Below, piece by piece: positions 45,566 to 55,343 of a stretch of DNA of 64,000 nt. Numbering within the stretch: position 1 is the stretch's first letter; every line of letters starts with the position of its first letter. A program made the position numbers and the translations under genes. The notes beneath the pieces are model-generated. The model did no database searches. It was given only the letters and a program-made list of their open reading frames with translations, and was not told the DNA's origin. The stretch is from positions 160,358 to 224,357 of IMG/VR virus record IMGVR_UViG_3300036770_006893; one strand, given 5' to 3'.

Positions 45566-45648
45566 TCTCACGGGAGGGACTCGAACCCTCAAGACTAAAA
45601 GTCGAGGCATTTTAAGTGCCTTGCGTATACCAGTTTCGCCACCGTGAG
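45566..45648 (-). tRNA. tRNA-Leu (anticodon UAA), CCA not encoded
   Basis: Acceptor CTCACGG/CCGTGAG+A, D-arm GCG-AAACTGGTATA-CGC, anticodon AGGCA-CTTAAAA-TGCCT, long V-arm, T-arm GAGGG-TTCGAGT-CCCTC. Confidence 0.95.
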
Positions 45649-45655
45649 GTATGAT

Positions 45656-46087
45656 ATGAATCCTAAACGAAAGTGTTCCTGTTGTCAAGTGTACAAAGAC
45701 GAATCATTTTTTGCATTTAAAAATAGAAAATTAGGTAGATTACAAACTAGATGTAAAAAGTGTCAATCAAAATATCATAAACAACATTATAAATCAAACA
45801 AAGAAACATATTGCGAAAGAGCCAGAGCCAATAATCCAAGATATAAACAAAGAAATCAACAATTTATTAATGAATATAAAGCCAAAAAGGGTTGTAAATT
45901 CTGTCAAGAAAATACTCCTGTATGTTTGGATTTTCATCATGTTGACCCAAACATTAAAGATTGGAATATATCAGTAATGTCTAGGAGTGCTAGTTCAATA
46001 GCAACAATTAAAAATGAAATTGATAAGTGCATAGTAATCTGTTCTAATTGTCATAGAAAACTTCATGCTGGAATAATAAAAGAATAA
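45656..46087 (+). CDS. Free-standing HNH endonuclease
   Basis: C..C Zn fingers; GC..C......LDFHH.DP...E..KC...C.NCHR..H. Confidence 0.85.
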   Translation: MNPKRKCSCCQVYKDESFFAFKNRKLGRLQTRCKKCQSKYHKQHYKSNKETYCERARANNPRYKQRNQQFINEYKAKKGCKFCQENTPVCLDFHHVDPNIKDWNISVMSRSASSIATIKNEIDKCIVICSNCHRKLHAGIIKE

Positions 46088-46177
46088 AAAAAGCAATCGA
46101 CTACAACAATCAAAAGTTTGAGGTTGATTATTTGTGTGCCTCTCCCATTATAACCGTTGTAGCCGACTACCTTTTTT
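46086..46177 (-). ncRNA. Long G-U-rich stem-loop (3' UTR element / sRNA / terminator) with an antisense loop
   Basis: 21 contiguous pairs (7 G-U) between 46151-46171 and 46092-46112, flanked by A/U runs. Confidence 0.75.
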
Positions 46178-46190
46178 ATAGTATTGACTC

Positions 46191-46472
46191 TCAGCCGTTG
46201 TTATGAGCCTTGAGGCGACGAACAAACTCAGCCATAGCCTCAACATTATCTACTGTCTTGGTTGGCTTCGCACGTTCCATAGAAGGAAGTTCGATACCCT
46301 TCTGGGCCAGAGCGGCCTTGGTGCGAGCATAACGAGCCATAGTACTGGCAACCTTTTGACCAGTCTTACTAGCGATCTCAGCATAAGTCTTAGACGAGTA
46401 AACCGCTTCAAGAAATGCCTCATCGCTGCAACGAACACGGGTCTGCTTCTCAACATTACTAATTTCTGCCAT
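46191..46472 (-). CDS. Small HTH-like DNA-binding protein
   Basis: MAEISN... after TTTGGAGG RBS; TYAEIASKTGQKVASTMAR HTH-like segment. Confidence 0.6.
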   Translation of the reverse strand: MAEISNVEKQTRVRCSDEAFLEAVYSSKTYAEIASKTGQKVASTMARYARTKAALAQKGIELPSMERAKPTKTVDNVEAMAEFVRRLKAHNNG

Positions 46473-46549
46473 GATAATCAACCTCCAAATTAAGTTACCT
46501 TACTTCACGGTTTCGGCCACACGACCTCAAACACCCGTGTTGTATTAGC

Positions 46550-46577
46550 ATTATATCCTATGTATCGGCGTTGTCAA
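46550..46577 (-). promoter_or_regulatory. Early promoter with GCCGATA spacer motif
   Basis: TTGACA-ACGCCGATACATAGGA-TATAAT. Confidence 0.8.
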
Positions 46578-46596: not shown

Positions 46597-46779
46597 CTAC
46601 TCAGACGGCAAAATAATTGCGAGTAATATATATATCCACAATAATAGACTGCCGGTTGCAAAAAATCCTAGTACAAATAAAATTCTAACTAAAGAAACTT
46701 CGATACCCATATATTCAGAAATGCCTCCGCAAACACCAAAAATATTTTTATGTTTTTGACTTTTAGTTAATCTTTTCAT
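46597..46779 (-). CDS. pspC: PspC-domain membrane protein
   Basis: MKRL.KS...K.I.GVCGGI.EY.GI...LVRI.......Y......P. Confidence 0.85.
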   Translation of the reverse strand: MKRLTKSQKHKNIFGVCGGISEYMGIEVSLVRILFVLGFFATGSLLLWIYILLAIILPSE

Positions 46780-48882: not shown

Positions 48883-48911
48883 ATTCTACACTACGAGTAT
48901 CGACTTGTCAA
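48883..48911 (-). promoter_or_regulatory. Early promoter
   Basis: TTGACA-AGTCGATACTCGTAGTG-TAGAAT. Confidence 0.75.
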
Positions 48912-50271: not shown

Positions 50272-50300
50272 AGTATATCATATACTATCGGCGTTGTCAA
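50272..50300 (-). promoter_or_regulatory. Early promoter
   Basis: TTGACA-ACGCCGATAGTATATGA-TATACT. Confidence 0.8.
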
Positions 50301-52242: not shown

Positions 52243-52595
52243 TGGACGAGAGGGGAGTCGAACCCCTGTCCTATCATATTTCTAATTACATCTTCTACAA
52301 GTTTATTCTGTTCATAAGTTTTGAGAAAGATTAAAGAACAAACAACATTCATCTTTCCGTACCAACTAGTCTCAGGCTAGAACCCGTTGGCTATTCTAGC
52401 AGCCGAAGGATTTTACGACAATCTTTTGAACGCTACCTTCATCGCTTTCTAAGATTGTTGCTACCTTTTATTAAGCAGCAAGGGCTAACTGAGTATTGCC
52501 AGTTACAGCATTTGGTAGATTTTTAAAGTGGCCTTTCCACCAACCACTACTTGCCAATATAATCTTCTTTATGTAGTCGAAACCTTTACTCGCCC
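52243..52595 (-). ncRNA. ssrA: tmRNA, tag (A)GNTQLALAA*
   Basis: Acceptor GGGCGAG/CTCGTCC+A with G3-U; T-arm AGGGG-TTCGACT-CCCCT; pk1 AGTGGTT/GGCCACT plus GGTGGA/TCTACC; TAACT precedes the resume codon; tag ORF 52471-52500; 353 nt. Confidence 0.93.
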
Positions 52596-53360: not shown

Positions 53361-53440
53361 TACTCCTGCTTGGAATCGAACCAAGTCCCCTTTCGGATTA
53401 CCTTATAAGAGTAATTGCCGGGAACCACCGGCACAGGAGC
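53361..53440 (-). tRNA. tRNA-Ile (anticodon UAU) with extended variable arm, CCA not encoded
   Basis: Acceptor GCTCCTG/CAGGAGT+A, D-arm CCGG-TGGTTC-CCGG, anticodon TTACT-CTTATAA-GGTAA, V-region TCCGAAAGGGGA, T-arm CTTGG-TTCGATT-CCAAG. Confidence 0.85.
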
Positions 53441-55315: not shown

Positions 55316-55343
55316 AGTATACTACCGTTATCGGCGTTGTCAA
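55316..55343 (-). promoter_or_regulatory. Early promoter
   Basis: TTGACA-ACGCCGATAACGGTAG-TATACT. Confidence 0.8.

What the first reader, a model, noticed from the sequence alone, without database searches (positions are those of the whole stretch)
46086..46577. Self-contained RNA switch: a 3' stem-loop whose loop is antisense to its own gene's RBS and to a second 5'-UTR site
Seen in sequence (minus strand): promoter 46550-46577, then a ~70-nt leader, a 93-aa HTH-like gene (46191-46472), then a stem of 21 contiguous pairs in which all 7 non-Watson-Crick pairs are G-U on this strand, closed by a U-run. Its ~38-nt loop contains AUAAUCAACCUC-AAA, perfectly complementary over 12 nt (plus 3 more across a one-G bulge) to the gene's own SD region UUUG-GAGGUUGAUUAU-C-AUG (46474-46489). 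The same loop (GGCACAC...ACCUCAAA) is also complementary to an upstream leader site UUUGAGGU-C-GUGUG-G-CC (46515-46531), which is displayed in a loop closed by CACGG/CCGUG. Inference: two mutually exclusive pairings (decoy vs SD) give a fold-back or trans-acting 3'-UTR sRNA switch. Translation would be allowed co-transcriptionally and shut off once the 3' end exists. This resembles hok/AapA fold-back inhibition, but controls a putative DNA-binding regulator rather than a membrane toxin.
Basis: partly seen in the sequence, partly recalled or inferred. Interest (0 to 1): 0.88.

Follow-up and report, generated by a model that had tools for sequence, protein, structure and literature searches.

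The report
Phage mRNA tail masks own start
A small, very conserved early gene of an uncultured freshwater phage ends in a long RNA hairpin whose tip is complementary to the gene's own ribosome-binding site; this is most likely a built-in brake on its translation, a rare kind of 5'-3' mRNA contact, here sitting between the gene and a tRNA.

Summary
On the minus strand there is a consensus promoter, a structured leader, a 93-aa helix-turn-helix-like ORF and a 21-bp stem with 7 G-U pairs. The 38-nt loop carries 12 nt that are perfectly complementary to the gene's SD-to-start region (2 of 20,000 shuffles reach this).

About 90 distinct relatives from IMG/VR change the picture:
- The stem is a real RNA structure (11 of 18 pairs covary). 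It is not generally a terminator: in relatives it is followed within 4-8 nt by tRNA-Leu(UAA). The window's U-run came with an HNH insertion.
- The loop/SD complementarity is kept in the derived clade, in different registers (13 nt, 8+8 nt, or 9-10 nt). One position shows G:C, G:U and U:A pairs: two lineages are compensated and one is not.
- The complementarity is absent from the basal clade, and more distant homologues lack the hairpin.
- The leader "decoy" is not conserved. The competing strand is a GAGG inside the loop itself.

Best reading: an accessory fold-back anti-SD element of the icaR type (confidence about 0.5). The main rival is a purely structural 3'-end or processing hairpin. Novelty: a new variant of a known kind.

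The parts
46550..46577 (-). Sigma-70-type promoter (TTGACA, 16-nt spacer, TATAAT). It belongs to a phage promoter class with a conserved CGATA in the spacer.
   Evidence: 12/12 match; four copies of TTGACA-N3-5-CGATA in the window, against 0.09 expected. The class is conserved in all relatives.
46506..46539 (-). Conserved 5' leader hairpin. The outer stem is CACGG/CCGUG. The inner stem is 46526-46523 with 46518-46515.
   Evidence: all 5 inner pairs show double changes; the GAGG of the 'decoy' is replaced by CAG in many relatives.
46474..46489 (-). RBS region: UUUG-GAGGUUGAUUAU (GGAGG at 46486-46482), the target of the loop. The start codon is at 46472-46470.
   Evidence: The region is nearly invariant in relatives, including clades that lack the anti-SD.
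46191..46472 (-). 93-aa ORF, a GC-rich island (49% against about 30%). The predicted fold is a three-helix HTH plus a C-terminal helix.
   Evidence: Variable sites by codon position are 40/32/85, which indicates a coding sequence. 689 homologues. AF2 pLDDT 80. Pfam Sigma70_r4_2 scores below its cut-off.
46085..46179 (-). 3' hairpin. The core 21-bp stem is 46171-46151 with 46112-46092, with 7 G-U pairs. It is extended by A/U pairs. The U-tract is at 46091-46085.
   Evidence: -38.3 kcal/mol, z = -8.6; the plus strand gives only -19.7. (covariation in 42 relatives).
46117..46131 (-). Anti-SD segment of the loop (AUAAUCAACCUC-AAA). Its CCUC (46123-46120) can pair either with the local GAGG or with the mRNA's SD.
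46139..46142 (-). Local GAGG (a pseudo-SD) that pairs with the loop CCUC to form an apical helix. It is the internal competitor of the real SD.
   Evidence: MFE; the GAG/CUC pairs are invariant; the closing pair varies among U-A, A-U and C-G.
45644..46087 (+). HNH endonuclease-like ORF inserted between the hairpin and the tRNA. It is absent from most relatives.
   Evidence: the Pfam HNH match is weak; only L001, L030 and L071 share the insertion and the U-run.
45566..45648 (-). tRNA-Leu(UAA). In relatives it starts 4-8 nt after the hairpin. In the window it has its own promoter-like site at 45688-45660.

Best explanation
The element is a cis-acting fold-back anti-Shine-Dalgarno (anti-SD) sequence carried on the apex of a 3' hairpin.

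The unit is: a strong early promoter, a 5' stabilising hairpin, a strong RBS, a small HTH gene, the long hairpin, then tRNA-Leu(UAA). It is made as one transcript. In relatives, RNase P cleavage at the tRNA 5' end would leave the mRNA ending a few nucleotides after the hairpin. The hairpin would then protect that end.

The apex carries CCUC plus flanking bases complementary to the mRNA's own SD, spacer and start codon. Locally, the CCUC is held by a GAGG strand in a short apical helix. Alternatively it pairs with the real RBS over 8-16 bp. That pairing would block 30S binding, and probably expose the mRNA to decay, once the full-length RNA exists. Output of the regulator is thereby limited.

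Shown:
- the structures
- their conservation
- the complementarity, with limited covariation

Inferred:
- that the pairing forms in vivo
- that it represses translation
- the role of RNase P
- the timing
For: - The 12-nt match is non-random: 2 of 20,000 shuffles reach it.
- The complementarity is kept in 66 of 86 unique relatives (types A and C), in different registers. These are 13 nt covering SD to AUG; 8+8 nt across a G bulge; 9-10 nt in a differently built hairpin with an open loop; and 14 nt where an extra U pairs the bulged G.
- Pair table of 44 unique type-A combinations, numbering from the first base after GAGG in the SD: positions +1 to +4 are paired in 42-44 of 44, and +5 to +8 in 35-38 of 44. 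Position +3 shows G:C 39, G:U 2, U:A 2.
- The two U:A lineages (L135/L133 and L248) are not sisters in the CDS tree. Fisher p = 0.006.
- Swap test: own pairs average -20.6 kcal/mol against -19.56 +/- 0.37 for swapped pairs, p = 0.0035.
- Net energies after paying opening costs: window -7.2, 13-nt clade about -6 to -8 (two members near 0 or positive), type C -9 to -12 kcal/mol.
- The G-U pairs and bulges point to RNA pairing rather than a DNA repeat.
- Mechanistic precedent: anti-SD-like 8-mers hundreds of nt downstream pair with the RBS, block initiation and promote decay (PMC12697547). The icaR 3'UTR pairs with its SD (PMC3868564).
- Contigs from RNA libraries cover the ORF, hairpin and tRNA of relatives.
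Against: - The SD side is almost invariant, also in clades without any anti-SD. Most of the 'conservation' therefore carries no covariation signal.
- The basal type-B clade (20 unique loci) has a homologous hairpin with no complementarity; net energies are +4 to +15 kcal/mol.
- Homologues at 41-73% identity have a simple or unrelated hairpin, or none.
- L299/L300 carry the SD G-to-U change uncompensated.
- In about a third of type-A loci, five loop bases drift freely. The net energy of their 8+8 pairing is about 0 after opening the local helix.
- CCUC is paired locally in the MFE.
- There are no strand-specific or end-mapping data, and nothing shows that expression is affected.
Confidence: 0.5

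Rival explanations
1. A purely structural 3'-end and processing hairpin. It protects the mRNA 3' end left by RNase P and insulates folding of the adjacent tRNA, which often contains an intron, from the mRNA. The complementarity to the RBS would then be a by-product. The apical helix happens to be built from a GAGG/CCUC pair, and the extra matching bases are historical residue with no regulatory use.
For: - The stem is the best-supported feature. It always sits 4-8 nt from a tRNA in relatives.
- Type B keeps the hairpin without any anti-SD.
- The loop bases facing SD +5 to +9 drift in a large clade.
- SD-side invariance is independent of the pairing.
- One SD change is uncompensated.
- In five relatives the tRNA carries a group I intron, so folding insulation is plausible.
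Against: - Loop bases with no local partner (CAUAAUCAA) stay complementary to the RBS across lineages whose leaders and stems have diverged.
- Several independent registers of complementarity exist, including a differently built hairpin, type C.
- Position +3 shows G:C, G:U and U:A pairs.
- The swap test gives p = 0.0035.
- Anti-SD-like sequences are normally selected against in mRNAs (PMC12697547), so retention needs a reason.
- Homologues with no hairpin still carry the tRNA directly after the stop codon, so the hairpin is not needed for processing.
Confidence: 0.25
2. A trans-acting small RNA derived from the 3' UTR. Processing (RNase P at the tRNA, RNase III or E in or before the stem) releases a roughly 60-100-nt hairpin. 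Its anti-SD loop then represses newly made copies of the same mRNA, giving dose-dependent negative feedback, or possibly other mRNAs.
For: All the complementarity evidence given for the cis model applies equally. A 21-28-bp stem is long enough for RNase III (established knowledge; not tested here). RNA-library contigs of about 109 nt centred on the hairpin occur in run X1 at depths similar to the ORF.
Against: There is no evidence for a discrete processed species. The contigs are unstranded assemblies and prove nothing about RNA ends. The flanks of the complementarity are specific to the element's own leader. The RBSs of the other three promoters of the same class in the window share only GGAG. 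The cis contact is kinetically favoured.
Confidence: 0.12
3. A DNA-level inverted repeat. The RBS region and the loop would be two copies of an operator bound by the encoded HTH protein, or a relic of an inverted duplication or of an antisense gene's RBS.
For: The two sites are an inverted repeat that flanks a gene for a putative DNA-binding protein. On the plus strand, the 13-nt clade's loop reads as GAGG, a spacer and ATG.
Against: - The G:U wobble (L054, L034), single-base bulges and shifting registers fit RNA pairing, not a protein recognition sequence.
- The antisense ORF is 6-77 aa long and not conserved.
- The repeat is absent from the basal clade, which encodes an 86-90% identical protein.
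- The conserved candidate operator is instead the CGATA motif in the promoter spacer.
Confidence: 0.05

Closest known systems
icaR mRNA 5'-3' UTR interaction in Staphylococcus aureus (PMC3868564)
   Same: An anti-SD motif in the 3' untranslated part of an mRNA pairs with the SD of the same mRNA. The gene encodes a small HTH-type transcription regulator. In icaR the pairing blocks the initiation complex and creates an RNase III substrate.
   Different: - Here the anti-SD sits at the apex of a long covarying hairpin with its own local GAGG competitor strand.
- The complementarity is longer: 8-16 bp, reaching the start codon.
- The 3' end is followed by a tRNA, not a terminator.
- It is a phage gene.
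- Nothing has been tested experimentally.
Long-range anti-SD-like sequences that repress bacterial mRNAs (Gill et al. 2025 preprint, PMC12697547)
   Same: Pyrimidine-rich anti-SD-like 8-mers several hundred nt downstream of the RBS pair with it, inhibit initiation and promote decay. The distance here is similar, about 350 nt.
   Different: Those were synthetic substitutions in B. subtilis, and such sequences are depleted from natural genes. Here a natural, conserved example is retained, which suggests it is used.
hok/Sok and AapA/IsoA fold-back inhibition
   Same: A full-length mRNA is kept translationally inert by pairing between its 5' and 3' ends. Translation depends on the state of the transcript.
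   Different: Those mRNAs encode membrane toxins, need 3' processing for activation, and are partnered with an antisense RNA. None of these features is seen here.
Lambda sib retroregulation of int (my own knowledge)
   Same: A phage hairpin located downstream of a gene controls expression of the upstream gene post-transcriptionally.
   Different: sib acts as an RNase III entry site that leads to 3'-to-5' decay. It has no complementarity to the RBS.
Intrinsic (rho-independent) terminator
   Same: In the window itself the stem is flanked by an A-tract and a U7 tract. It probably terminates there.
   Different: Relatives lack the U-tract and run straight into a tRNA. The 38-nt structured loop and the 21-bp G-U-rich stem are atypical for a terminator.

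Membership tests
icaR-type 5'-3' UTR anti-SD interaction | The 3' untranslated segment contains a motif complementary to the SD of the same mRNA | tested here: met
   12 nt perfect in the window. At least 8 nt in types A and C.
icaR-type 5'-3' UTR anti-SD interaction | The complementarity is evolutionarily maintained (conservation or covariation) | tested here: inconclusive
   Kept in the derived clade, with G:C, G:U and U:A pairs at one position and a swap test at p = 0.0035. Absent in type B and in distant homologues, and uncompensated in L299/L300.
icaR-type 5'-3' UTR anti-SD interaction | The pairing prevents initiation-complex formation and lowers protein output | not testable with these tools
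   Needs toeprinting or reporter assays.
icaR-type 5'-3' UTR anti-SD interaction | The duplex is cleaved by RNase III | not testable with these tools
   No end-mapping data. One search gives only unstranded contigs.
hok-type fold-back inhibition (type I toxin-antitoxin) | The ORF encodes a small hydrophobic membrane toxin | tested here: not met
   The 93-aa product is soluble, helical and HTH-like.
hok-type fold-back inhibition (type I toxin-antitoxin) | A cognate antisense RNA gene overlaps the leader | tested here: not met
   Only weak plus-strand promoter-like matches (9-10/12) near the element; no conserved antisense feature.
Intrinsic terminator | A stable stem immediately followed by a U-tract | tested here: inconclusive
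   Met in the window (U7 at 46091-46085). Not met in most relatives, where a tRNA follows within 4-8 nt.
Any Rfam family | A covariance-model match on the element | tested here: not met
   at an E-value threshold of 1: only the tRNA and one chance snoRNA hit inside the ORF.
HTH DNA-binding regulator (Sigma70 region 4-like) | A Pfam match above the gathering threshold, or a significant structural match | tested here: inconclusive
   Sigma70_r4_2 scores 19.5 bits against a cut-off of 25.7. AF2 gives a three-helix bundle. The best PDB hits are LysR/MarR DNA-binding domains at E >= 0.3.

The most novel reading that the evidence does not exclude
The unit could be a processing-coupled 'single-burst' mRNA. 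The early regulator would be translated only while its mRNA is being made. Once the hairpin is transcribed and RNase P has cut off the adjoining tRNA, the apex swaps its local pseudo-SD partner for the real RBS. The stable mRNA is then silenced for good. Alternatively, the released hairpin acts as a phage small RNA. That would be a timer built from an mRNA, an anti-SD hairpin and a tRNA gene. No such arrangement has been described for any phage, to my knowledge.
Probability: 0.15. Interest if true: 0.8.

Novelty: new variant of a known kind. Interest (0 to 1): 0.6.

Why it matters
Natural 5'-3' end pairing within bacterial mRNAs rests on very few cases (icaR, hbs). Recent work suggests that long-range anti-SD contacts are potent and generally selected against.

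This family offers a conserved natural example in an abundant group of uncultured freshwater phages of about 200 kb. It comes with built-in natural 'mutants':
- clades with 13-nt, 8+8-nt and 9-10-nt pairings, and clades with none
- two compensated SD changes and one uncompensated change

These make the idea directly testable with reporters. The family also shows how an mRNA can be given a 3' end by a tRNA gene rather than a terminator. Finally, it flags a very conserved early HTH protein of unknown function.

Tried and rejected
- **Rfam**: no family matches the element.
- **INPHARED phages**, by DNA and by protein: no match. The ligase next door is at most 37% identical to any cultured phage, so neither taxonomy nor host could be assigned.
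- **Genome contigs**: three short MAG contigs with discordant taxonomy (Terrimicrobiaceae, Thermoplasmatales, Flavobacteriales). These are probably mis-binned phage DNA and give no host inference.
- **Leader 'decoy' site**: rejected as a conserved feature.
- **Apparent 9-nt match in type B** between the loop and the leader GAUUGGUUA: rejected. The loop strand covaries with its local partner (AUUGGU/ACCAAU to AUUAGU/ACUAAU) while the leader stays unchanged.
- **Antisense ORF** starting at the RBS-like plus-strand reading of the loop: rejected because its length is 6-77 aa and it is not conserved.
- **RNAfold of the whole transcript**: it cannot represent the loop-SD pseudoknot, so I computed duplex and opening energies instead. 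One row of that script (L135) mis-located the apex and was ignored.
- **Metatranscriptome contigs**: no RNA run holds the window's own sequence. Relatives' contigs show presence in RNA libraries only, with no strand, ends or processing sites.
- **PDB sequence and fold searches** for the protein and **PHROGs**: nothing significant.
Full report
**1. What is in the window**

Read on the minus strand, the region contains the following.
- A perfect sigma-70-type promoter: TTGACA at 46577-46572, a 16-nt spacer, TATAAT at 46555-46550 (12/12).
- A leader of about 70 nt.
- A strong SD (GGAGG, 46486-46482).
- An ATG at 46472 opening a 93-aa ORF that stops at 46193-46191.
- A hairpin whose core stem (46171-46151 with 46112-46092) has 21 contiguous pairs, 7 of them G-U, and a 38-nt loop.
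- A U7 tract (46091-46085).

The hairpin folds at -38.3 kcal/mol (z = -8.6) on this strand, against -19.7 kcal/mol on the other.

Loop bases 46131-46120 are the exact reverse complement of 46485-46474, which runs from the SD through the spacer. Only 2 of 20,000 dinucleotide shuffles of the loop reach 12 nt against the leader.

The ORF is a GC island, 49% in a genome of about 30%.

**2. The gene**

The protein has 689 close homologues in metagenomes and more than 170 loci in IMG/VR. Many of those lie on contigs of 200-240 kb from freshwater samples. No cultured phage has a match.

Variable sites fall 40/32/85 on codon positions 1/2/3, so the ORF is coding and under strong purifying selection (83-100% amino-acid identity).

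AlphaFold gives a three-helix HTH-like core plus a C-terminal helix, with pLDDT 80. The Pfam Sigma70_r4_2 match is below threshold. Foldseek finds only weak LysR/MarR DNA-binding domains at E >= 0.3. 'HTH-like regulator' is a reasonable label, but it is unproven.

The family is small: 23 clusters at 50% identity.

**3. The module seen in relatives**

I aligned 55 and later about 90 distinct elements. All share:
- the promoter, including a conserved CGATA in the spacer
- a multi-tier leader hairpin whose inner 5-bp stem covaries at every pair
- an almost invariant RBS region (UUUGGAGGUUGAUUAUG)
- the ORF
- a long 3' hairpin

In nearly all of them the hairpin is not followed by a U-tract. A tRNA gene starts 4-8 nt later, and it is tRNA-Leu(UAA) wherever ARAGORN calls it.

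In the window, an HNH-endonuclease-like ORF on the opposite strand (45644-46087) has been inserted between the hairpin and the tRNA-Leu (45566-45648). The U-run appears only in the few relatives that share this insertion: L001, L030 and L071.

The stem is therefore not, as a family trait, a terminator. The mRNA 3' end in relatives is most plausibly made by RNase P at the tRNA. That is an inference from established tRNA processing and was not tested.

**4. The stem is a real RNA structure**

RNAalifold on 42 type-A sequences gives 18 pairs. Eleven of them show double (compensatory) changes. G-U pairs are abundant and A-C pairs are almost absent.

**5. Three hairpin types, and where the anti-SD sits**

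- **Type A** (63 of 86 unique elements, including the window). The apex reads GAGG, then a CACA-rich loop, then UCAACCUC. GAGG and CCUC pair locally. That helix is invariant, and its closing pair varies among U-A, A-U and C-G.
- **Type C** (3 unique elements, plus L301). The stem is different, and the open loop carries CAACCUCCAA.
- **Type B** (20 unique elements). The hairpin is homologous, but its apex is AGAGACA...CAUCU, with no CCUC.

In a CDS tree rooted with the 73% identical L178, type B is the basal grade. Types A and C form a derived group with support 94/95. The anti-SD apex is therefore a derived gain.

More distant homologues lack the element:
- L178 has a simple 17-bp hairpin.
- L182-L185 (41% identity, still syntenic with the upstream PspC gene) and L304 (73%) have no hairpin. 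The tRNA-Leu begins 7-9 nt after the stop codon.
- L180 has an unrelated GC-rich hairpin.

The invariant core of the module is promoter, small HTH gene and, in most members, tRNA-Leu. The hairpin, and then its anti-SD apex, are successive additions.

**6. Is the loop/RBS complementarity maintained?**

Yes, in types A and C, and in several registers.
- One large subclade has 13 nt (CAUAAUCAACCUC), exactly complementary to GAGGUUGAUUAUG. This includes the start codon.
- A second large subclade has let the five distal loop bases drift. It pairs 8 nt (UCAACCUC) plus a further 8 nt (AAAUCAUU with AAUGAUUU) upstream of the SD, across the one-G bulge.
- L159 has an extra U that pairs that G, giving 14 contiguous pairs.
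- L034 and type C have an extra C. They pair GAUUGGAGG or UUUGGAGGUU(G), 9-10 nt.

In a position-by-position table of 44 unique type-A combinations, numbered from the first base after GAGG:
- SD +1 to +4 are paired in 42-44 cases.
- SD +5 to +8 are paired in 35-38 cases.
- SD +3 shows G:C 39, G:U 2, U:A 2 and U:U 1.

The two U:A cases, L135/L133 and L248, have very different leaders and stems and are not sisters in the CDS tree.

A targeted metagenome scan then found L299/L300, in which the same SD change is not compensated. Counting unique combinations, a loop A occurs in 2 of 4 SD-U cases and in 0 of 41 SD-G cases. Fisher p = 0.006, not corrected for phylogeny.

A swap test on 30 representative elements shows that own leader/loop duplexes are about 1 kcal/mol better than permuted ones (p = 0.0035).

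The loop bases that match SD +1 to +9 have no local partner. Maintenance of the local helix therefore cannot explain why they are retained.

**7. Thermodynamic plausibility**

The contact is a pseudoknot, so ordinary folding is silent on it. I summed the duplex energy and the ensemble cost of opening both segments in the full transcript. The net values are:

| Group | Net energy (kcal/mol) |
|---|---|
| Window | -7.2 |
| 13-nt clade | about -6 to -8 (L144 -0.3, L117 +11.3) |
| Type C (anti-SD already unpaired) | -9 to -12 |
| 8+8 clade | about 0 |
| Type B | +4 to +15 |

These are crude figures. They use a bimolecular initiation term and ignore pseudoknot entropy. They do show the contact is feasible where the complementarity exists.

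**8. The 'decoy'**

The window's leader site is real: 9 nt perfect, plus a further stretch. However, it lies in the 5' half of the conserved leader hairpin. In many relatives the inner stem has covaried from GGUC/GACC to CAGUC/GACUG. This removes the GAGG while the 3' loop is unchanged. The longest loop-leader match outside the RBS falls to 3-7 nt.

The better candidate for a competing strand is the GAGG inside the loop itself. In the 8+8 clade the whole 5' strand of the apical helix resembles the real leader. The anti-SD strand therefore has two alternative partners.

**9. Mechanism**

The best-supported reading is an icaR-like fold-back. The completed mRNA's 3' apex pairs with its own RBS, lowering initiation and probably stability.

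Two papers make this plausible:
- In icaR, a 3'-UTR motif pairs with the SD, blocks the initiation complex and creates an RNase III site (PMC3868564).
- In B. subtilis, anti-SD-like 8-mers hundreds of nucleotides downstream pair with the RBS, inhibit initiation and promote decay. Such sequences are depleted from natural genes (PMC12697547).

A conserved anti-SD of 8-16 nt about 350 nt downstream of a very strong RBS is thus expected to be repressive. Its retention therefore suggests that it is used.

The hairpin's lower stem probably also stabilises the 3' end. Loss of the anti-SD in type B, and its absence in distant homologues, mean it is a modulatory add-on and not the core of the module. 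I put this reading at about 0.5.

The rivals are:
- a purely structural hairpin (0.25)
- a processed trans-acting RNA (0.12)
- a DNA-level repeat (0.05). The wobble pairs, bulges and shifting registers argue against it, and so does the non-conserved antisense ORF.

**10. Expression data**

No RNA run contains the window's own sequence. Contigs from four freshwater metatranscriptomes, laid on relative L177, cover the ORF. In run X1 they also cover the hairpin and the tRNA at comparable depth. They are unstranded assemblies of relatives and say nothing about RNA ends or processing.

**11. Verdict**

It is a new variant of a known kind, with good natural material for a decisive test.

Noticed in passing
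L037:3405-3593, L042:3411-3602, L045:3410-3603, L062:3407-3602, L077:3417-3610: In relatives where ARAGORN finds no tRNA after the hairpin, Rfam finds a group I intron (56-69 bits) just after the tRNA-like 5' half, which ends ...GGACUU. This looks like a phage tRNA-Leu(UAA) interrupted in the anticodon loop, as in cyanobacterial and plastid tRNA-Leu. The window's own tRNA-Leu has no intron.
   Followed up: partly
window 52243-52595 (-): ARAGORN calls a phage-encoded tmRNA gene with tag peptide GNTQLALAA.
   Followed up: no
window 53361-53440 (-): A second tRNA, tRNA-Ile with anticodon UAU.
   Followed up: no
window 46563-46577, 48898-48911, 50286-50300, 55329-55343 (all on the minus strand): Four promoters share TTGACA-N3-5-CGATA, against 0.09 expected by chance. 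The CGATA spacer motif is also conserved in homologous loci down to 41% protein identity. It may be a phage-specific promoter class, or an operator, perhaps for the HTH protein itself.
   Followed up: partly
window 45644-46087 (+): An HNH-endonuclease-like ORF is inserted, convergent, between the hairpin and tRNA-Leu. It is present only in a few relatives (L001/L002, L030, L071). It probably brought the U-run that turns the hairpin into a terminator-like site. A promoter-like TTGACA-17-TAGGAT (45688-45660) lies just upstream of the displaced tRNA.
   Followed up: partly
window 46191-46472: The ORF is a sharp GC island (49% against about 30%) with codons typical of highly expressed genes and no UUA codon, although the tRNA that follows reads UUA. 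This fits an immediate-early gene tuned to the host tRNA pool.
   Followed up: no
window 46131-46138 and the apices of all three hairpin types in relatives: A CACA-rich motif just after the local GAGG/GAGA (for example GAGGCACACAA, AGAGACACA, AAGGACACAA) is conserved even in type B, which lacks the anti-SD. No pairing partner or function was found.
   Followed up: no
L147 against L159; L161 against L164: Loci whose CDS is nearly identical (L147/L159) or sister on the tree (L161/L164) carry different 3' hairpins (different type-A stems, or type A against type B). This implies recombination that shuffles the hairpin/tRNA segment independently of the gene.
   Followed up: no
window 46597-46779 (-); L182-L184: A 60-aa PspC-domain membrane protein lies immediately upstream. 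A PspC gene also lies upstream in homologous loci at 41% identity, separated there by a CAP-domain gene.
   Followed up: no
L302, L303, L304: The gene occurs on short contigs binned into MAGs of three unrelated lineages (Terrimicrobiaceae, Thermoplasmatales, Flavobacteriales). These are probably phage contigs mis-binned into genomes.
   Followed up: no
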